From NCBI GenBank assembly GCA_051294905.1, contig CM119379.1, positions 15,934,001-15,998,000 of the forward strand: a stretch of 64,000 bases of DNA, in the 5' to 3' direction. The notes under the pieces were generated by a model, which saw only the letters and a list, made by a program, of their open reading frames with translations, was not told the DNA's origin and did not search any database. This DNA comes from Botryllus schlosseri (taxonomy: Eukaryota). Below, piece after piece: positions 7,101 to 27,412 of the stretch (position 1 is its first letter; the number at the start of each line of letters is the position of its first letter). Both the position numbers and the translations under genes were made by a program.

Positions 7101-10100
7101 GCTATCCTGCATCATACTAACTTTGTTTTAGTGAGCGCCCTCGTCACCAAACTGACGTCATGCAAACATTTTCACGAGGCGAGATGGCGAGCGAGAAACT
7201 GTCTGACGTTTCAAAAGCTGGGCTTGTTCCGACATTGTTCGTATGAAACCGGGTATCCGAATCGCGACAACTCCCAGAAAGGTACCGTTCAGCTTTGATG
7301 ATTGAATGGCAAACTTCACTCTTTCAAATCAAGTGTACTATTGCTTATCTGTAGTTGCCATCGTTAGTTTATTGTTTCCACATTGATATTGCTCCATTTC
7401 CTTGTATAAGCCGTCAGTATGTAATCACTTGTCTATTGTTGTGCGTACCGTGTATTATTTATGATTTGTTGTGGAATAAGTTTAATAAATCCTATTTTTT
7501 GTTCATTTGCACACTTACCTTAATACAACCAAATACTCCATTTTGTGATCGAATTATTGTGTTTCGTACGAACAAATTCATCGTCCGTTGTCATTGATCC
7601 AATTATTGATATTACGAAGCACCATGTAATGCCGATGTGCAACGTGATTAATATATCATGTGCTGATATTCTTCAATAGGAACCAATCCGTATACAAGGG
7701 ATGTCCGCGATGTCGACATGGTTCTGGCTCAAACTGAAATGCCGAGTGAAGGGGATAAGCGATTTCAACAGCAAAGATCCAAATCAAACAGGTAATCGAT
7801 GGTTTTTTATCTTGAAAACTGTAAAACCGTCCGGAAGCTCAAATTAACTACCACGGAAGACCCGTGAGACTCTATTTGGGCTCGATTTGAGTTTATATTT
7901 GTGATCCGTGTTATTCGAATATTATAACTTTTGCCATTCTGACAAAAAAACGCGACACGACGCACACGTTGTCTTCATGTTCCATAAACAGAAGGGTTAG
8001 TAACAAATTACTACTACTTTTTCAGAGTACGCAGTAGGTTTTCCCTACCTGTACTACATTCTTGAAGGGTCATGTGTTAGACTTCTTCCACTTCTACTTA
8101 ACAGAATTTTGGGTAAAACTACTGATTTTGAACATTTTCATATTGAAATAAACCCGAAAATATCCGGGAATATAATAAATTAGTCAGTTGTATATTGAAG
8201 TTCTGTACCTCCAAGAAGCTATTTTCAATTTTGTAAAGTAGACAGTAGTTTTGAAACAAGTTTGCGTCACTTTTACGGGTGAAATAGTAGTACTTCTACT
8301 ATTGTTGTTGTAATTGATACTTCAACATTTAAATGAGTCAAAATTTAGGCCATTACTTCTACTTTTACTAGAGTAACAACGCTGACTTCTTGAAAATCTC
8401 AGCCCATAAATGAAGTAGCATATTGTTCTTTTGAATGCAAGTGTTCAATGCACACACTTCTAGGCCAAAATCTTCGTTGCTAATGCTAAAAATTGTATTT
8501 ATTCCAACCGTGCAAGTACGTCAATGTTGACATTAAATTTATCTGCCCGTGTTAATGCTTCAACTTTGATTTTCGAACCCCCATAGGTGTGGTTATTAGT
8601 AACACATTGCATGCCAGGGTAATCATGTTAGGATTGCGGGAATTTGAAATTTTACTGCAATCGGTCGTGTGTTTCATTGCAATTAACAGGAGAGTCTTCT
8701 TCAACGAAGCGTACCTCAATCACAAGCCCGCTCAGCCACTGCAGTCGTCCACTTATGCAGATGCTGACACGACCTTGCAGTACACGAAACAATACCTGGA
8801 GATGAAGGCTGACGTGAGAAAGGTATGTACCAGTGTTGGGATGACTCGAGTCATGACTTGACTCGAGTCAGACTCGAGTCACCTTTTTCGTATGACTTGA
8901 CTTGACTCGAGTCACTTTGGTAAAATGACTTGACTTGACTTGACTCGACGTATCAGAAATGTGGATTGACTCGTGACTCGGAGCAAAATTCACGAGTCAA
9001 TTTCAAGTCATCAAGTAATCGGTGACGATAAATATCACTGTATCTTCCATATGTTCTGATTGTTCGCGAAAAGCCTCCATTGTTCTCTCACAAATATATT
9101 GACCGCAGACGAAGTGATCCAAGCTTATAGCTTACGTTGTCGTAAACTAGTAGTAAAGAAATTTAATAGCAAAATGTCTATTTCTGTTCTCTGTTCTTTC
9201 CTTAACGAAACCTCTTGTTTTATTTAAATAGAACCCGAATATAGTTTAAATAGTTCTCAACCATTGGCGTAGGCTCGAATTGAATCATCTCAATTTGTAA
9301 AAGGGTATTGCATCTTATCCATTCGCTTCTCTATTCTCTATTTTGGCTGGTAACTGTGAACTGAGGCTATGCAATTACTTACGTAGTTTAACAGTTCTAC
9401 GAATATGTGAGCGATGCAGCCCCTTTTAGCGTGTATTTTCAAGTCTATATTCGTCCATCGGTTCAGAATCAATGACCGCTCAATATGTATTTCAGACATC
9501 TGGAAAAATTCAACGATGTAATCATGCCTCATACTCCGAAAAGGCAACTTGACTTGAATTGTGACTTGACTCGTGACTTGACTTGACTTGACTCGACTTG
9601 ACTTGAGTCACCTCCAAAAATCGAGTGACTTGACTTGACTCGAGTCACCTTTGAAAATCGATTGACTTGACTTGACTCGAGTCAAAATGTGCAATGACTC
9701 GAATTGACTCGTGACTCGAAGGTAGTGACTTGATCCCAACACTGGTATGTACTCATTTTCCGCTGAGATGTGGAATGGATAAGTTCAGTTACTACATAGT
9801 CTATAATAAACAGAAGTGGTCGGAGTACTCAGCTTTGCTACCCAAGTGGAAGATGCAGTAACACCGTAAAGTTATTACGTTTTGAATTGAAAAGTGTATC
9901 ATTGCAAGTAACGTCAAATGACAGACGAGAATATATTCAGTTAGCATGATACACCATCTCTTTCATACAGTTCTGAACGGGAATTTCGTTAAAGTGATCT
10001 CCTATAAGTGATGCAACCTCAACATAGAGTACATTCAACTAAATCCAAAGTGTCAAGATTAGTTACTTAGGAAAACTGTAGAAGTAGAATTAGCAGTAGT

Positions 10101-13100
10101 TTAAAACAGTACGTCTTGAGTGAGTAAAGCAAGTTGAAACAGTTTAGTGGAAGTGATTTATTGCTGACCACCATCAACCGTAAGGGATGGTACTGCGGAA
10201 TGGAGCTCTCTGCATGCTTTCACCCCATATTCAATTGAAAATTCCAGTACAAATGGCACAATGCGGATAATATCATTGTTCGTAATGTTTCATCCATACT
10301 TTTGTTTCAACTCTGATTGTGCCATGGCAGAAATCTCTGAAAACCGATCCAAATTCACTTTTGCTCCATATTACAGGACTCGCCTTAGGTCCCGTGCTAG
10401 CGTGTTCCTGCTGAATATTGCTTTTTCATGGTTTAGTTTACTTTGTCTTTCTTAGGTGAGCGAACAGCAGCAAATACTGCAACGGGTGTATGCGAATTGT
10501 CGCGATCGATCTGCAGCTGCTTCTCAAAACGTCTTGACCAAAGACACTCTCAAGGTGAAAACATGCCCTTGCGAATTTGTCAAACGTGTATTATCTCTGC
10601 ACCTTCCTTGTCCAGCAACACATGCACATAATTCATTCATGATATGCCTCTACACAGATCGTGTGTATACGCCGCAAAACAAAAATATATAACGTCCTAT
10701 TCCTACACATTCATTTTCTTCTTCCACTTAACCAGCTTCAACACATCTGGAAATTGAGACCTTTATAATCACGGTGCCGTTTTCATTGTCCGTTCAGACA
10801 TTGTTACGTCACGCAAGAACGATTCATCACGTTACGTCTTCGATACTGGTGAGTCCCTACTTTCGGAGGTCGATCCCCGGCTGCAAACCTGCCAAAACAG
10901 ACCCACCGTCTGAAAATTTGGCCGGTGCGAAAGAGCCTGCGGTCCGCAAAAGGAAAAAGCGTTTGTCGGGATCGATGAGAAAATCTGGCGAATTCTCAGG
11001 TACGCCCCTACTAACTACTGGATTTTCAAAATGCGCAACTAGAACTGAAACTGGAGAATGACAACCTTCAATAATTCACAACTAACTAGATTAACGTCCG
11101 AACCGGCTCTTTAACTCATCAGGGATACCATCAGCAATAATGCGAACATTCAAAATAAATATGTTCAACAACAATCAGTAACTATGTTTAACAACAATCA
11201 GAATCAAAGTCAAAATTATAATCAAAGTGCGGTTACAAAGTTTTTTCGAGTTTTTTACGTAGACGGACGCTCAAGAACTTATTCAAAAACATATCGATTC
11301 GTACAGTCTCAATGATAAAAAGCGTATCGTTTTCTGAATAGATTTACAGGAATGTTGGAGTCGGTGGTAAAATGAACCGAATCCACAGCTCTGCTGGGTA
11401 CTCATGTAGACGTAGAAGTAATTGTCAAAAATTTTTACTCAAGCGCAAGTAGAATTAGAGATTTAGGTTTCCAAGTAATTAAAAAATATGTAGGCTTGGT
11501 TTCGCTTGAAAAACTGAAACAAAACCATTCCAGTAAGTGGTGCATGTCGCAAAAATGATTCTCCACCGTATTGAATGTCTGCCGCGAGACACGATAAAAC
11601 CTTGCTTCTTGCAGGAAAAAACCCGGAAGAAACACGCAGCAGGAGCAACTCGACGAGAAAAGAAGGGAAAGGATCCAAAAGCAGTCTGCAGCACTATTTT
11701 GTAGACTCGTGAGATATCATGGTTTGTGCAGCTTAGCGACCACGGTAATTCCATGATTTTGTCCCTTCCACAGGCTGGACTCTCCCCCGTTTGATGTCGA
11801 AGAGCTGAAGAAGGCCATCGCCAATCAGTACATACAATATTGGCAAAGTCTGCAGTTTTTAATGGTACGGAGCTTATATTGCTAGGTGATTAGTAACGAA
11901 GTGCCACTTTTTTAAAGTCTGATGTAGGGTTTGCTTACTTGTGCAAATTATTATTCAAGTGATTTATGTTTTTAGACTGATTCTATTCCTAAGTGGCAGT
12001 TTTCAGTCTGCAGGCAAAAGTCAGCCTAGCATGCATATGTTCTGCTTATTTCTCTTGAATTCTAAACACAGCTGTAGAGATTCTAAACACAGCTGTGGAG
12101 TTACGTTAGTACCCACTGCAATATCGATTGGAATTTTGTAGAATGTCTGCAGCACTGTTATGAGTGAACTTTTTGGAATGACTGTACATAATATCCTCAA
12201 CATAACCATACCTGAATTTAAAATTATTTTGGGAGATAACAAATTGCTACTCTTACTTGTAATTGAGTAAGAATTTACGGCTTTACTTCTACTTCTGATC
12301 GAGTATCACTGCCAGGGTTATAATAACTCGAGCCGCAATGACTTGACTCGAGTCAATGAGTGTAGTAACTCAACTTGTACTGGACTCCGTGCACATGACA
12401 CGACACATATTGTATGACTTACTGAAGTCTCGTATATGGGAATTGATAATTAAAAAATAGGCCTTGAAACTCTCATTTATCTGTTTGAATAAACATGTGT
12501 AGAGTGAGAAAAATGAGTGTGACATAAATTCGAGGCTTTCGATATTACTCAATCGTTTCACAGAAATAAGTTGAATCTGACTTGAACTCTACACTGAACA
12601 GGAAACACTGACTTTGACTCGGACTCGAGTCTTAACACGATGACTCGAACTGAACTTGTTGCTCCCTGTCTTTGACTCAGACTTGACTCGGTGTTGAATT
12701 CAAAATGGGTCGATTTGAGTCGAGGCTAAACTATAAAAGTCAAACTGACTCGTGACTCGGAACCTTGTGACTTGGTTTCAATCCTGACCAATGCTTAATA
12801 ATTTGACCATATCTTGTTACTCTCGACCACATTGTTTTGGTACCAATTCCTTCAAGGGCGTGGTGCTGGTTTCATTAGTTTTTTATTTAGGTGAAAGAGG
12901 AACATCGGGGCAGAAGTGAAAAACTCGTCAAAAAGTCTGCCGATTCAAACGTAACAAAGCAAGGCTCGACGAAGCAATCAAACAAGGCGACGTCTACGAA
13001 ACTGGATGGTTAAGATTACCGTGTTCTATCTGTTGAAACATGTTTCTTATCGTTTTAAGCTGAATGCTCAAATCTTACGACCATGTTTACGTACACTATT

Positions 13101-19100: not shown

Positions 19101-22100
19101 ATCAGATTCTGACGCCTTCCAATCCTAGATCTTAACAGGAGATTGTAATGCATTCTTTCGTACTAGTGTCCTGCTTAGGATTCAGTGTAGCCATAGTAAT
19201 TGAGGTCACCACTGTAGCTGAAGTAGAATCGTTTATCATATAATGTAAAAGCGTTGAAAAAGCCGACGAACTTTCCGTATTCTAGTAAACTTGGTAGGTG
19301 TTTGATGCAATTGAATTTATGGCAGGGCGTTTGCTATAACTTGTTTTATAGTAAGATCGGCGCAGTTTGTGACTCCGAGCATTGCTGATGTCTATTTGAT
19401 ACAACCGGCAATCTTTAATATCAATTATCGAAATTATTATCTAGTAATTAGATCCTTCGTGCTTTCAAGCATTTCCTGGCAGGAAAGGTGTGCACTTGAT
19501 AGAATTGCGCTATTTGTAGCATTTATGCTTGGGGTAGCCAACTCAAACCGGGTCGCTGGTCAATTTTCGTATAGGCCGCGGGCCGCATGTTTTCAAAACT
19601 TTATATCAGAACAACGCTGTGCTATCTAACATGAGCTAGGGGCATAATCACCACAAAAGAAATAATATTTTAAAATAGAAATACAACAAAATATCATAAT
19701 CATCACTGCACACAATACTTGACGACACTTTTCCACGACTAACGACTCGATAGTGGGGTTAGCTATACATGCGGCGCTTGCTAAAAATCTACCTCCTCGT
19801 AAAGCTTGATCGTGTGGGAGAGCACCAAGTTGATTTTAAGCGTCTCGGTCTTGGCAGTTTATGGGCTGTTGCACTTCAAGGCAATATGCCCAATAGGGTT
19901 GTTCAAAAAAAACTTTTTTTTCCAAATCTCACTCGCTTGGTGACTAAATCGTCAGGTTGTCTAAGAAAACGATGCACATCAAATTCGAGTCAATTGCAAC
20001 CAGTAAAGGCCGTGCAATCTTGAATTGAAATTTTTAATTTATTAGTAAAAATTAAAAAAAAAAATGTCAAAATTTTCTGTCAACCTTATGAAATTGTTGG
20101 GTTGTCTTCAAATACGATGCAAAACAAATTTGACTTAATTCCGACTAGTAGGAGCGGAGTTATCTGAGTTTTCGTTGATAATTCTCGCATTATTCTTGAT
20201 CCGGGGATTATCAACGAAAAACTCAAATAACTCCGCTTCTACTAGTTGGAATTGACTCAAATTTGTTTTGCGTGGTCTTTGAAAAATTTGAATTTTTTTT
20301 TTTTTTTAATTTTTACTGATAAATTATCAATTTCAATTCAAGATTGCACGGCCTTTACTGGTTGGAATTGACTCAAATTTGGTGTGCATCGTTTTCTTAG
20401 ACAACCTGACGATTTAGTCACCAAGCGAGTGAGATTTGGAAAGAAAAGTTTTTTTTGAACAACCCTAATGCCCAATTGCCCATTCATATCATACCAGGTT
20501 TATAATGACTCGAGTCATTTTCTAAAAAATGAAAAATGACTCGACTTGAGTCAATTTGTGTATTGACTCGACTTGGGCTCGAGTCATTGTGCATGACTCG
20601 GAGCAAGTCATATGACTGGAGACTGGGTAACCAAGACGAGCATTTCATTGTAATTTCGAAGAATAGTAAAGTTATCACACTAGTGATATTTGGTCTATCG
20701 GTACTGGTACTTGAAAATGCTACCAGAAACTGGTCAAAGTGAGGAAAATTAGCATATTACGAATGCGAAGCTTTCGATATCGCTGAGCAGACCTGTAAAA
20801 AGTGGGTTTCACATGACATTAACTGGGAACTGAACAGTCAACATAATGACTTGGACTCGGACTCGAGTCAAAATACTGTGACTCGGACTCGACACTCTTA
20901 TCCGTGACTTGGACTCGGACTTGACTCGGTGGTGAATTGAAAATGACTCGACTTGACTCGAGTCTTTGACTATAAAAGTGAGATTGACTTGTGACTGGGA
21001 ACCTTGTGACTCGGTTACAGCCCTGTATCATACCATCGTCGAAACCGTATCAGCTAATGTGGAATAGCGATGTTAGGTACAGGAGAATAGCAACAACAAT
21101 ATTGTTAAATTGAAATCAATTTCAGCATTTCGAAATGCTTTATTAAGATTTTTTCCGAAATCTCAAATCAGATCGTGACCCCTGATTCATACCAATGTTT
21201 TCAGAACATCATCCTTGATTCTGCCTTGGATTTATTGAAACAGTTTCCGCCACCACTAGGGTGAACACATGATTCGACTCCAACATGATAATTGTAATGG
21301 TTCGAGTTGAGTAGTGAGGAACGATTTTGATTTTTCTAGTATTGGTACTATACGCCCCTTCCCATTAAAAGTTGCATTATTTCAGAGAATTATAGTTTTT
21401 AATGTTTTTTTTCCCAACGCCTTGAGACCTCGATTGATCGTATCACAGGATACAAAACATGTTGCACAAAACTACGCACGTTAGCGGACATTACATTTTT
21501 AGGAAGTCGTGATCAACCCACAGCGTTGTCACAAAGTCTAATAAGTAGGTATGGTCGAAAAAACACCATATTATCTTTATTATGATGTAGAGATGGCATT
21601 CTATTCTTTATGGTCACAAAAAGGTGCATAACTGTACTTGCAATATCATCGATACCCTCATGTTATCATATTGTGTGATACTCGAATACCCATCTCGAAT
21701 CCTAATACTCGATTTAGCCCAGAATGTTTTTCATTCAACTTTTCGTCTAACATTTCCGCTCTACATACAGTTGCAGAACCAGCCGTCGTTGCTGACCATC
21801 GAAGATTTCGAACACCTGCTGAAGCACTGTCAGAAAATACCTCTCGAAAATCTGGACAAGCGCGGGGCGGTGCTTTGCGACACGGCGGCGATGGGCGTGC
21901 CATGGGCGCTGACCGTGCAGAAGCTTCTTCTGGCGAAATTCAAGGATCACGGAAGATACTTCATCAATGCTAGCGAGACAAAGAAATATCTGGTATGGGT
22001 TATTCTAGGGTCGTCGTTATCTCCTGTGTATCAGAGATCTGAATCACGGAGAAATTATGTGTTATCACTGGCGTTGCTACTCCAATAGAAGTAAAAGTAA

Positions 22101-23592: not shown

Positions 23593-24518
23593 GTGTAAAA
23601 AGTCAATCCTTCAGTCACAAATACTATCGGCTGTCTTTGAAATTCCAGACCAGTAAATACATACCGCTTTGCTCTCATAGACGCCCTAATACTAGTATCG
23701 AGTTGACCGTAACGGCGTAACGTAGTCAGCAAAGACATTTCTTGAGCGGTACAATACCGCGGCATCATAAGATCGTATTTAGATGTCATGTCATGCTATG
23801 TACAAATAGATGCCACATCTTTGCCATCTTTTTCTGATAGTTGACTTGTTTCGCTGATACCTCCAAAGATAGCCTGAAGTACACATAAATAGGAGTCGGT
23901 TTGTTTTTCTTTGCTTTGCTTAAACGTGCGCTCTATCTTAGTTCTACATAAAGCCATTCACTCGTAAGAAACTGGCAGAATTTTCTATGTGATTGACTGT
24001 TGCGGTGCTGTTAAAATCGTGGCGGTAGGCGAAATGTGACCATGGAGGTAATTTTAAGTGACCCGCGAAAGTCTGATCTGAAAATTTTTAGATGAAATTC
24101 GCAACGTGAGCACATGTATATAAGCTTCACATTAATTGCAGAATTCCCTCGGATACAACCTCATGAAGTTTAATCGGAAGGAAATTACGGTGATGCTCCG
24201 TGACAAGATTGCCCCTAGCGAAAGTGTTTCAACATTAGTGATAAAGTCATTGTCTAATTTTCGTTAGGCCTACCATTATGCTGAATTGATGATGTGGTCG
24301 GAGGCTAAAGTCGCCAATACTGTACCGAGGCTACGTAGCGCCGCGAGGTTACTTTCAAAATGTTTTACGGTTTTTACAACAGTAACTGGGAAACCGGCGT
24401 CGAATTTCGCGTTACTGGATCTGCTCGTACCTCCATTGTTTTCGCGGCTCAAAAAACCCGCAGGGTATATAGATAGGTCTAATGCAGAAGGCGTAGAATA
24501 GCCTACTGCTAATTGCGC

Positions 24519-26139
24519 ATGGCTGTAAGAAATCGGTGGACTATGTTGCTGAAGCTGCGCAGAATTTATAATAATATGCGCAATAAAATAGGGCGTCAGA
24601 ACAAAGGAATTACTTTCTTACTTGGTGCATGCCTTTCTCTATATTTTATACGAGGCGTATATTATGATAGTCGAGCGAGAAAGTCACGACCATTCTTCAA
24701 AGAGACTGTGAACACATCATTATGGAGGGTTTACTCAAGTGAAATTCAAGAGCCATTTGCTGCGAGCTATAAAGAAATGCCGACAGTCCCTGTGGCTTCA
24801 TTTGACAAGACCTCACATAAAGTAGTTATTATTTATGCGACTAAGCGATCTGGCTCCACCCTAATCGGAGAATTTTTCAACCAAAACAAGCATTGTTTCT
24901 ATTTGTTCGAACCACTTTCTCCATTTTCCCGGGATTGCCATCTACTCCTCGGTGAAAGATTTGATTTCCTTCATCAACTTGTCCAGTGCAATTTTTCATC
25001 GCTGCCGCAAATTTACAAGAATGCTCTTCTTCAATCAAACCACACTGACGTAAACGCTAAATGTCTGCAGAACAATCTTTGCTTCAGCAATAGAAACAAA
25101 TATCTCCTTTTCCGATATGCAGCGGCATGTGGACGAGGAAACAAAACCGCAAGTTTTCACGAGTTGACACGATTTGTTGCTGCTGATCCGACTTGTGGGT
25201 ATCCACTCCGATCTGAAATAGTTTCATCTCTGTGCAATTCTGCCCCATTCGTTGCATACAAAATTATTAGGATGTGTAGTATTCGTGATGTTGTGCCACT
25301 CCTCGCATACCCGAACGTTTACCTGATTCATTTGATGCGAGATCCCAGAGGTATATTGGGTTCAAGGATTGACCTGGACTCAGATGAATTAACGGCTAGA
25401 GATGTGAATTCAGCATCGTTGAAACTCTGCGAAGAAATTGCAGATAGTATCGACTTCATGGACACAAAAGTGAATAGCGGTAAGTTCAAATCATGGCCTC
25501 CTCGTAGTCATTTTCATCATTTTGATTTTGAAAAACAGATGGCAAATCAAGATATTTGCGAGTCAGATACGAAGATATCGCTTTGAACCCATTGTTGCAC
25601 GCTTACATTATGTACAAGTAAGCTCACGTGAAACATATGTATGGCGTATGCTCTGTTCGTTGGTAGTTATGGGGAATAATACAGCGATACGTCTCCGCAA
25701 CCGCGTATTCATGATAGCAATATAGAAATCGATGGCCCTTCGCCAACTGTTCCGCAATTTCTTTTAATTACATATCACTAAATTTTTAGATTCATTGGTC
25801 GAGACTTACCAGGATCGGTGAAATTGTGGATCACAAATTCGTTTCTGTTCGACGGAAAGATGCATAAAAAGGTTCGTAAGCCCGGAATGTCTAATGTGCA
25901 CGAAAGAAGAAACTGACGGTAATATAGCTTCTCTAAATTTTAAGGAATCCAAGGACCCGTACAGCACCGTAAAATTAGTCCAGCAGTCCATTATGTCTTG
26001 GAAAAACAGACTGACCTACGATCAAATATCTCAGATCCAGAGGAATTGCGCGATTGCCATGGAGAAAATGCGATACAACGTTATCACATCTGAAGAACAT
26101 ATGAAACACTGGAACATATCACTGTTAGGTTATACATGA
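24519..26139 (+). CDS. Carbohydrate (GlcNAc/Gal-6-O) sulfotransferase, CHST1/3/5-like, type II Golgi membrane protein, about 438 aa
   Basis: Exons 24519-25479, 25539-25617, 25790-25871, 25945-26139 join in frame. Contains an N-terminal TM (ITFLLGACLSLYFI), the 5'-PAPS motif IIYATKRSGSTLIGEFFNQ..YLFEPL, the 3'-PAPS motif HLMRDPRGILGSR, and YLRVRYEDIALNP. Confidence 0.92.
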
Positions 26140-26371
26140 AATATCATACTTCTGTTTTCCCATGAGATGGCACTGAACTGTATACGATTGCTCCGGGCGA
26201 GGAGTTTTATTTCATATTCCTATCACCGCTTCCCGCGTCACCTTATCGTAAAAAAGCCTGATTTGAGACTACCATTGTCTCGTGGCTGCTGTTATTCGAT
26301 CTCGCCCGTCATTCAGTCCGCGATTCGCTGTCTTGTGATAAAATAAGAGGAAGTCTTTTAGCTGTCGTATT

Positions 26372-27412
26372 ATGTCTTCGAATCGTATTTACATGGGGAG
26401 ACTTAGCCATAGGGCTCGGGAAAGCGATATAGAACGCTTTTTTCGGGGTTATGGAAGGATCCGCGAAATAATGCTCAAGAACGGGTACGGTTTTGTCGAG
26501 TTTGATGATCACAGAGATGCCGACGACGCCGTACACGATTTAAGCGGAAAGGAGCTTTGCGGGGAGAGGATAGTGATTGAGATCGCTAGAGGAACCCCGC
26601 GAGGTGCCGGTGGAGCGTTTGTAGGTGGCTATTACCCACCTCCTCCACCACCAAGGTACCGCGATTACGGAGGATACGGTGGCGACCGTGGTGGATATGG
26701 ACATGGTGGCGGGAGAAGAGGTGGCGGTGGTGGAGGTGGATATGGCCCTCCGTCCCATACGGAGTACCGTGTAATCGTGGAGAATCTTTCTTCGAGAGTT
26801 AGTTGGCAAGATTTGAAAGACTACATGAGACAAGCGGGAGAGGTTACTTTTGCTGATGCTCATCGGTATCGTAAAAACGAAGGTGTTGTTGAATTTGTTT
26901 CGAAAAGCGAGATGGAACATGCAATTGAAAAGCTTGACGGAACTGAGATTAACGGGAGAAGGATCAAATTAACCAAAGATAACTCCCGTAAAAGACGTAA
27001 CGACTCTAGATCTCGTAGCAGAAGCCGTAGTCGCGGCCGAGATCGCAAGTCTCGCAGCAAGTCCGGAAGTCGCAGTCGCTCTAGAAGTGGCAGCAGAGGG
27101 CGCAAAAGGTCACGAAGCCGTGACGATCGAAATGGACGTTCTAGATCTCGCAGTGATTCAGGCTCGCCTGCCAAGAAGAAGGACCGCTCAAGGTCAAGAT
27201 CTGAAGACAGAAAATCGAAATCAGAGGAAGACCACAACGATCAAGACAAAGCGGACGATGTCCCGGATAAGGAAGAGAATGGCGATAATGAGAGAAAATC
27301 CAGAAGCAAGAGCCGGTCTGCGTCTCCGCGTAGCGATCGTAAGGAGTCCAGAAGTCGTAGCCGTTCTCGGTCCAAGTCACGCTCCAGGTCTCGATCCAGA
27401 AGCCAGAGTTGA
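26372..27412 (+). CDS. SRSF6: SR splicing factor of the SRSF4/5/6 (SRp55/B52) family, 346 aa, intronless CDS
   Basis: RRM1 ([26 protein letters not shown]), Gly/Tyr/Pro linker, pseudo-RRM2 with [15 protein letters not shown], and an RS domain. The exact paralog (4/5/6) is not resolvable; likely a co-ortholog. Confidence 0.95.

What the first reader, a model, noticed from the sequence alone, without database searches (positions are those of the whole stretch)
8815..9755. Transposon target-site duplication copies the SZT2 5' splice site
Seen: the exon ends AAG|GTATGTAC and those first 8 intron bases are the TSD of a 914-bp MITE. A second donor-like site, CTG|GTATGTAC, now sits at 9745. Inferred: the insertion kept the original donor and created a ready-made alternative. 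Using it would add 922 nt of stop-containing sequence, an instant poison extension (NMD substrate) in an mTORC1-regulator gene. This resembles introner-style splice-site duplication, and the perfect TIR and TSD suggest a recent, perhaps polymorphic, insertion.
Basis: partly seen in the sequence, partly recalled or inferred. Interest (0 to 1): 0.7.

Follow-up and report, generated by a model that had tools for sequence, protein, structure and literature searches.

The report
hAT transposon duplicated an intron's donor
A 914-bp defective hAT transposon landed on the first eight bases of an intron in a probable SZT2 gene and copied the splice donor, but RNA data show only the original donor in use, so this looks like an ordinary, tolerated intronic insertion.

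Summary
A 914-bp element (8831-9744) has perfect 12-nt inverted ends and a perfect 8-bp target-site duplication, GTATGTAC. The left copy is intron bases +1 to +8 after the exon that ends at 8822. The right copy forms a second donor-like site, CTG|GTATGTAC, at 9744|9745.

The element is an internal-deletion derivative of a 4.4-kb autonomous hAT transposon found elsewhere in this genome, which encodes a 618-aa BED/hAT transposase. The family has about 9,000 intact ends. Its targets follow the hAT rule nTnnnnAn, sharpened here to roughly GTA..TAC, which resembles a 5' splice site.

RNA contigs from three studies join 8822 to 10456, the original donor. No 9744-to-10456 joint was among the joints shown.

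This copy differs by 3.5% from its subfamily majority. Its right junction is also present in two other samples, so a recent or private insertion is not supported.

The excess of donor-like flanks in the family is driven by the target motif (GTATGT 13, GTAAGT 3). The two donor hits found (this one and an Arf gene) fit the 4-9 expected by chance.

SZT2 identity rests on one weak but specific match.

The introner-like and poison-exon readings are unsupported. The scan's notes hold no earlier finding of this on other DNA.

The parts
8690..8822 (+). Coding exon (133 nt) upstream of the insertion; ends AAG
   Evidence: RNA contig joints 7791->8690 and 8822->10456 in runs X5, X6 and X15. The reading frame stays open across six joined exons.
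8823..8830 (+). Left target-site duplication GTATGTAC, which is the functional 5' splice site (+1 to +8)
   Evidence: Predicted U1 duplex -8.2 kcal/mol.
8831..9744 (.). 914-bp non-autonomous hAT element, an internal-deletion derivative of a 4.4-kb autonomous hAT
   Evidence: Family copies with 8-bp duplications. The two end blocks align to the ends of the autonomous element L080:3481-7851 at 78-87% identity.
8831..8842 (+). Left terminal inverted repeat CAGTGTTGGGAT
8842..9011 (.). Left subterminal array of short repeats (TGACTCGAGTCA and GACTTGACT motifs)
   Evidence: families D1-D6 and I17-I24.
9544..9732 (.). Right subterminal array of the same short repeats
9733..9744 (-). Right terminal inverted repeat (ATCCCAACACTG on the + strand); its last G supplies position -1 of the distal donor-like site
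9745..9752 (+). Right target-site duplication GTATGTAC, a donor-like site CTG|GTATGTAC with no RNA evidence of use
   Evidence: Predicted U1 duplex -6.7 kcal/mol. No 9744->10456 joint among those shown.
9753..10455 (+). The rest of the original intron (703 nt), single copy in the assembly
   Evidence: only a self match. The intron ends AG at 10454-10455.
10456..10554 (+). Next coding exon (99 nt)
   Evidence: Joints 8822->10456 and 10554->10798.

Best explanation
A 914-bp internally deleted hAT transposon was moved by the transposase of a 4.4-kb autonomous relative. It integrated into the 8-bp target GTATGTAC, which happened to be the first eight bases of an existing 711-nt intron of a probable SZT2 orthologue. 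hAT integration uses an 8-bp staggered cut, and gap repair duplicates those 8 bp. The exon therefore still abuts an unchanged donor (+1 to +8), and the element is removed with the intron, now 1,633 nt long.

The site was hit because it fits the family's target preference (nTnnnnAn, here about GTA..TAC), which overlaps the 5' splice-site consensus. The insertion was probably kept because it is close to harmless.

The second donor copy at 9745 is a by-product. It is not detectably used. Inferred reasons are that the first-transcribed donor wins, that the distal site lacks exon context, and that it can be locked in a 21-bp stem formed by the inverted ends and the self-complementary duplication.
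For: Shown:
- Anatomy of the element.
- 22 of 30 family copies have perfect 8-bp duplications and 5 more match at 7 of 8.
- The family is large: 3,683 matches to the 39-nt left end against 0 in the control. 2,696 ends have A at -16, which implies about 9,000 ends.
- Target motif: T at position 2 and A at position 7 in 55 of 92 unique flanks each, and GT at the start in 20 of 92, against a background of 0.058. Genome-wide there are 2,052 GT-starting ends, and A at position 3 in 41 of 89.
- Published hAT motifs agree: nTnnnnAn for Hermes (PMC10368747) and GTNCGNAC for hobo (PMC3276498).
- Autonomous partner L080:3481-7851 has the same ends, the duplication GATAAGCG, and a 618-aa ORF with zf-BED, DUF659 and Dimer_Tnp_hAT. 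The MITE's two end blocks align to it.
- The splice joint 8822->10456 is present in RNA contigs of X5, X6 and X15, from three studies.

Inferred:
- Chance expectation of 3.5-8.9 donor-coincident ends.
- A long-range stem pairs 8822-8842 with 9733-9753, in both the MFE and the centroid structure.
Against: - Only assembled contigs, not reads, cover the exons. The one raw-read RNA run (X23) had no reads on them, so a minor isoform that uses the distal donor cannot be excluded. 19 joints were not displayed.
- The unique part of this intron has RNA contig depth in X5 (3-5) and X6 (10-18), while bins in the two upstream introns read 0. The element may therefore not be fully neutral for splicing.
- The expectation calculation assumes 100,000-250,000 introns; this was not measured.
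Confidence: 0.8

Rival explanations
1. Poison extension. The distal donor is used in a share of transcripts, adding 922 nt with an early stop, so that nonsense-mediated decay lowers output of the gene.
For: The distal site pairs with the U1 5' end at -6.7 kcal/mol, within the range of confirmed donors of the same gene (-3.8 to -8.1). An in-frame stop lies 12 codons in. Contigs drop rare variants, and decay would hide the isoform.
Against: No 9744->10456 joint is among the best-supported joints in three transcriptomes, whereas 8822->10456 is present in all three. The distal site's exon side lies inside a predicted 21-bp stem. Nothing suggests regulation.
Confidence: 0.12
2. The element impairs removal of its host intron, through retention, slow splicing or a shifted acceptor, without the distal donor being used.
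For: RNA contigs cover 9722-10282 in X5 and X6. An unspliced 106-nt contig (10378-10483, depth 19.5) crosses the acceptor in X5, beside the spliced form at depth 38.7. Bins in the 398-nt and 898-nt upstream introns read 0. That contig's left end sits next to an acceptor-like ...attacag| at 10376. The ends of the element can form a long stem.
Against: X15 shows no intron depth. The tool warns that holes prove nothing. The small 170-nt intron upstream is also found unspliced. The strand of the contigs is unknown, so another transcript could account for them.
Confidence: 0.25
3. Introner-like behaviour. The family targets splice donors or creates introns, recruiting its 5' splice site from the duplication.
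For: Introners that take their 5' splice site from the duplication are documented (PMC9860276). 20 family ends follow G|GTRWGT against 8 for a scrambled control (p=0.018). A second donor-coincident case exists at an Arf exon. One copy lies inside a long ORF (L074).
Against: The excess is GTATGT (13) and not GTAAGT (3), against a background of 30:37 (p=0.003), and the motif is palindromic, which is a property of the transposase target. The element ends in ...CACTG, with no AG. A 703-nt unique intron existed before the insertion. Of the 18 other donor-like flanks, one is the L074 copy inside an ORF; eight of the rest had an upstream ORF long enough to test and none matched Pfam, and the remainder were not tested. 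Two hits fit the chance expectation.
Confidence: 0.04

Closest known systems
hAT superfamily non-autonomous elements (Ac/Ds, hobo and Hermes type MITEs)
   Same: 8-bp target-site duplication; inverted ends that begin CAGTG (YARNG); subterminal short repeat arrays; target motif nTnnnnAn or GT....AC; an autonomous partner with a BED zinc finger and the hAT dimerisation domain.
   Different: Nothing essential. This is a lineage-specific family of about 9,000 ends, and this copy's target happens to be a splice donor.
Introners that recruit the 5' splice site from their target-site duplication (PMC9860276)
   Same: A transposon's target-site duplication supplies GT-starting donor sequence next to the element.
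   Different: Introners create a new intron in an exon and carry or recruit both boundaries. Here an existing intron was merely lengthened, the element has no 3' splice site, and the duplicated donor is not seen in use.
MITE or transposon insertions in introns that alter splicing (for example plant MITEs, PMC6593561)
   Same: A small DNA transposon inside a gene's intron, with potential cryptic splice sites and hairpin-forming ends.
   Different: Here the canonical isoform is what the RNA data show. Altered splicing is only hinted at.
Unproductive splicing coupled to nonsense-mediated decay (poison exons and extensions)
   Same: Use of the distal donor would give a transcript with a premature stop.
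   Different: No evidence that the isoform exists, is conserved or is regulated.

Membership tests
hAT superfamily (non-autonomous member) | 8-bp target-site duplication | tested here: met
   This copy matches 8/8. 22 of 30 family copies match 8/8 and 5 match 7/8. The autonomous copy matches 8/8.
hAT superfamily (non-autonomous member) | Short terminal inverted repeats beginning 5'-YARNG | tested here: met
   CAGTGTTGGGAT at both ends. The YARNG rule itself is recalled from the literature and was not checked here.
hAT superfamily (non-autonomous member) | Target preference nTnnnnAn | tested here: met
   T at position 2 and A at position 7 in 55 of 92 unique flanks each (hand tally; p=4e-9). 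The motif is described in PMC10368747 and PMC3276498.
hAT superfamily (non-autonomous member) | Shares its ends with an autonomous element that encodes a hAT transposase | tested here: met
   L080:3481-7851 has terminal 40-mers matching at 37-38 of 40. Its 618-aa ORF carries zf-BED (7.7e-9), DUF659 and Dimer_Tnp_hAT (1.9e-20).
Introner / introner-like element | Insertion creates a new intron whose boundaries are set by the element and its duplication | tested here: not met
   The spliced intron runs 8823-10455 and includes 703 nt of unique, single-copy sequence beyond the element. The element ends ...CACTG with no AG.
Introner / introner-like element | Copies strongly concentrated in genes as introns | not testable with these tools
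   No gene annotation was available. Of 20 donor-like flanks, only 2 show exon evidence.
SZT2 (KICSTOR subunit) orthologue | Sequence similarity to SZT2 along the protein | tested here: inconclusive
   An 82-aa RNA-supported peptide gives human SZT2 as the top three of 177,635 PDB sequences, at residues 2645-2717 of 3432, with E 0.06-0.2. The six other peptide or ORF pieces searched against PDB gave no SZT2 hit (less one search's own query). There is no Pfam model hit and there were no hits in two large protein searches.
Alternative 5' splice site coupled to nonsense-mediated decay | The distal donor is used in RNA | tested here: not met
   The joint 8822->10456 is present in three transcriptomes. 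No 9744->10456 joint is among the joints shown. This is contig-level evidence only.
Alternative 5' splice site coupled to nonsense-mediated decay | The extension carries a premature stop | tested here: met
   922 nt with an in-frame stop after 12 codons.

The most novel reading that the evidence does not exclude
Because this hAT family's preferred target (about GTA..TAC, then CTG| supplied by the element's own end) mimics a 5' splice site, intron position +1 is a recurrent, nearly harmless landing site. Each such insertion leaves the gene's donor intact and plants a spare, competent donor about 0.9 kb downstream. Across roughly 4,500 elements this would seed a small set of latent alternative donors (SZT2, Arf and others) that selection could later turn into regulated unproductive isoforms.
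Probability: 0.15. Interest if true: 0.5.

Novelty: new member of a known kind. Interest (0 to 1): 0.25.

Why it matters
This is a clean worked example of how a transposase's target preference can coincide with a splice signal. hAT targets start with GT and often GTA, so a hit on the first base of an intron rebuilds the donor through the target-site duplication, and the gene tolerates it. That explains why such an insertion can persist in an essential-looking gene, and it cautions against reading duplicated splice sites as adaptive or introner-like. It is of modest interest to people who study transposon-driven splicing change. It does not open a new question.

Tried and rejected
Gene identity:
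- Pfam on ten ORF pieces gave no SZT2-type model.
- Eight PDB sequence searches gave one weak SZT2 hit.
- A whole-library HMMER search with a guessed 74-aa exon (21771-21992) found nothing, so that guess is probably not an exon.
- The word-indexed protein search with the 82-aa peptide found no candidate.

Raw RNA reads:
- Run X23 gave no reads on the exons in the 6% of the run that was sampled, so read-level junction counts were not obtained.

Empty allele:
- The unique part of the intron has no second copy in the assembly.

Other donor-like flanks:
- For eight of the other donor-like flanks, the upstream ORFs had no Pfam match.
- The next Arf exon was not found within 10 kb of the second case.

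Autonomous partner:
- A first scan of 30 transposase loci was ambiguous.
- The extended locus L080 resolved it.

Rejected readings:
- A 9-bp duplication. The ninth G is the element's own last base.
- Perfect inverted ends and duplication as a sign of youth. At 3.5% divergence, 40 bases stay intact with probability 0.24.

Full report
**1. The observation**

The sequence reads ...GTGAGAAAG|GTATGTAC|CAGTGTTGGGATGACTCGAG... at 8815-8850. At 9725-9760 it reads ...GTGACTTGATCCCAACACTG|GTATGTAC|TCATTTTCC.

- The element spans 8831-9744 (914 bp).
- Its terminal 12 nt are perfectly inverted, and the 8-bp flanks are identical.
- The 12-mer, allowing one mismatch, occurs only at these two places in the 64-kb window; 0.19 matches are expected by chance.
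- Both subterminal regions carry arrays of short repeats (TGACTCGAGTCA and GACTTGACT).

RNA contigs fix the exon boundaries at 8690-8822 and 10456-10554. The left duplication is therefore exactly intron +1 to +8.

The ninth matching base (G at 8822 and at 9744) is not part of the duplication. It is the last base of the inverted end, which every copy carries.

**2. What the element is**

The genome (495.5 Mb) holds many copies.
- A DNA search gave 47 matches from 5,131 first-look candidates. The nearest other copy is 95% identical.
- The 39-nt left end occurs 3,683 times with up to 3 mismatches, and 0 times in the control.
- 2,696 intact ends have A at position -16, which implies about 9,000 ends.
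- Of 30 fetched copies, 22 have a perfect 8-bp duplication and 5 match at 7 of 8.

An autonomous relative sits at L080:3481-7851.
- It is 4,371 bp long, with the perfect duplication GATAAGCG.
- Its terminal 40-mers match those of the MITE at 37-38 of 40 positions.
- It has a 618-aa ORF with zf-BED, DUF659 and the hAT dimerisation domain.
- MITE positions 1-580 align to one end of it at 78-87% identity. Positions 574-914 align to the other end at 81-82%.

The MITE is therefore an internal-deletion derivative of a hAT transposon.

**3. Target preference**

I tallied by hand 92 unique flanks out of an unbiased listing of 100 ends.
- T is at duplication position 2 in 55 flanks, and A at position 7 in 55.
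- GT is at positions 1-2 in 20 (22%). The window's GT frequency is 0.058.

Genome-wide, 2,052 ends have a GT-starting flank. Among 89 unique listed ones, position 3 is A in 41 (p=6e-4).

This is the classical palindromic hAT target: nTnnnnAn for Hermes (PMC10368747) and GTNCGNAC for hobo (PMC3276498). Here it is about GTA..TAC. GTATGTAC is a perfect fit to that pattern and is also a good 5' splice site.

**4. Is the family enriched at donors?**

- Ends preceded by G|GTRWGT number 20, against 8 for a scrambled control with the same composition. In the window the two motifs are equally common, 31 each (p=0.018).
- The excess is GTATGT (13), not GTAAGT (3), although the window background is 30 to 37 (p=0.003). 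This points to the transposase's motif and not to splice donors as such.
- Among the 20, two have exon evidence.
  - The first is the present locus, from RNA.
  - The second is L079. There an Arf-family exon (PF00025, E=4.9e-40, profile positions 1-83 of 174) ends ...ACACAG. It is followed at once by GTATGTAG, then an 895-bp copy, then GTATGTAG again.
- Of the other 18 flanks, one (L074) lies inside a long ORF. Eight had upstream ORFs of 30 or more codons that were run against Pfam, and none matched. The rest were not tested.
- Assume 100,000-250,000 introns. Then 2,052 GT-starting ends falling blindly on the genome's roughly 58 million GT sites would hit 3.5-8.9 donors (the intron number is an assumption).

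Two or more observed cases are what chance plus the target motif predicts.

**5. Which donor is used?**

Contigs from three runs belonging to three studies (X5, X6, X15) contain the joint 8820->10454. The table marks it 'GT..AG, cut +2', which places it at 8822|10456. In X15 it lies in a 2,278-nt mRNA contig that also joins 7791|8690 and 10554|10798.

No 9744->10456 joint is among the joints shown. 19 weaker joints were not displayed.

The only raw-read RNA run (X23, about 6% sampled) had no reads on the exons, so rare isoforms cannot be excluded.

By pairing with the textbook U1 5' end, the distal site scores -6.7 kcal/mol. The proximal site scores -8.2, and the gene's other confirmed donors score -3.8 to -8.1. 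The distal site is therefore a credible decoy.

Its use would add 922 nt and bring a stop after 12 codons.

Folding 8790-9790 as RNA pairs 8822-8842 with 9733-9753, in both the MFE and the centroid structure. The duplication GUAUGUAC is self-complementary with two G-U pairs, so the stem covers both donor copies.

I infer that U1 binds the first-transcribed donor before its partner strand exists, and that the later copy can be sequestered. This step is inference.

**6. Age and polymorphism**

- This copy differs from its subfamily majority at 32 of 909 positions (3.5%). The nearest copy is 96.5% identical in the alignment.
- At that divergence, 16 duplication bases stay intact with probability 0.57. 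All 40 duplication and inverted-end bases stay intact with probability 0.24. Perfection is therefore weak evidence of youth.
- Contigs run from the element's right end into unique intron without mismatch. In X6 one covers 9722-10015, and in X5 one covers 9729-10022. The insertion is thus present in samples from two studies other than the assembly's source.
- The element side of these contigs is only 16-23 nt, below the tool's 31-nt bridging rule. It nevertheless matches the element and not the exon.
- No second copy of the locus exists in the assembly.

**7. The gene**

Six RNA-supported exons give one open frame of 297 codons. An 82-aa peptide spanning two of them finds human KICSTOR protein SZT2 as the top three of 177,635 PDB sequences. 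The match covers residues 2645-2717 of 3432, with E 0.06-0.2 and 74 aligned residues, including QKLGLF.H.

The score is weak. However, SZT2 was the protein named in advance, and the position fits a gene whose 3' end lies downstream in the window. Other pieces gave nothing. I rate SZT2 as likely (about 0.85) but not proven.

**8. Unexplained**

RNA contig depth covers the unique part of this intron in X5 (3-5) and X6 (10-18), but not in X15. Bins inside the two upstream introns read 0.

In X5 a 106-nt contig (10378-10483, depth 19.5) crosses the acceptor unspliced. Its left end is next to an acceptor-like ...attacag| at 10376. This could reflect retention, an alternative acceptor or another transcript. 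The tool warns that holes prove nothing.

**9. Verdict**

This is an ordinary intronic hAT MITE whose target happened to be a donor. The coincidence is explained by the hAT target motif and by the size of the family. The poison-extension and introner readings lack support.

The scan's notebook held no earlier finding of this on other DNA.

Noticed in passing
L079:1523-1780 (- strand); G000:C21 near 299,208-299,230: Second donor-duplicating insertion. An Arf-family coding exon (Pfam PF00025, E=4.9e-40) ends ...CAG. It is followed at once by the duplication GTATGTAG, an 895-bp copy of the same family, and GTATGTAG again. The next Arf exon was not found within 10 kb downstream, so this may be a long intron or a truncated gene copy on a small unplaced contig.
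   Followed up: partly
L074:1525-2634 (- strand); G000:C11 near 8,323,796: A 916-bp copy with the duplication GTATGTGG sits inside an ORF of more than 430 codons. The ORF reads on across the reconstructed empty site. It has no Pfam match. Whether the gene is dead or the element is spliced out is unknown.
   Followed up: partly
window 9753-10483: RNA contigs cover the unique part of the element-bearing intron in two of three transcriptomes. One contig (10378-10483) crosses the acceptor unspliced and starts next to an acceptor-like AG at 10375-10376. This could be intron retention or an alternative 3' splice site that adds 79 nt.
   Followed up: partly
L080:3481-7851 (G000:C7:15,662,480-15,666,850): Apparently intact autonomous hAT element of 4,371 bp with a perfect 8-bp duplication and a 618-aa BED/DUF659/hAT-dimerisation ORF. 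It is the likely source of transposase for the roughly 9,000-end MITE family. Two sister loci have the same domain score (L038, L039).
   Followed up: partly
L031-L035, L044: Another group of hAT transposase loci carries a near-identical end motif (CAGTGTTGAGAT) in a fixed position about 1.4 kb from the dimerisation domain, oriented away from it. Its meaning is unclear. L036 holds a full MITE copy beside the transposase.
   Followed up: no
window 8110-8260 and 7506-7656: Two other short repeats inside the same gene's introns have very high summed RNA contig depth. The first also has raw RNA reads with many different flanks, which marks an abundant transcribed repeat family.
   Followed up: no
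Pfam gives only a sub-threshold C2H2 zinc-finger hit (24.5 bits against a cut-off of 27). Its ends are not those of the CAGTGTTGGGAT family.
   Followed up: partly
window 24513-25583 and 26342-27409 (+ strand): Downstream neighbours: a long ORF with sub-threshold sulfotransferase similarity, and an SR-protein-like ORF with two RRM domains (E=7.5e-31).
   Followed up: no
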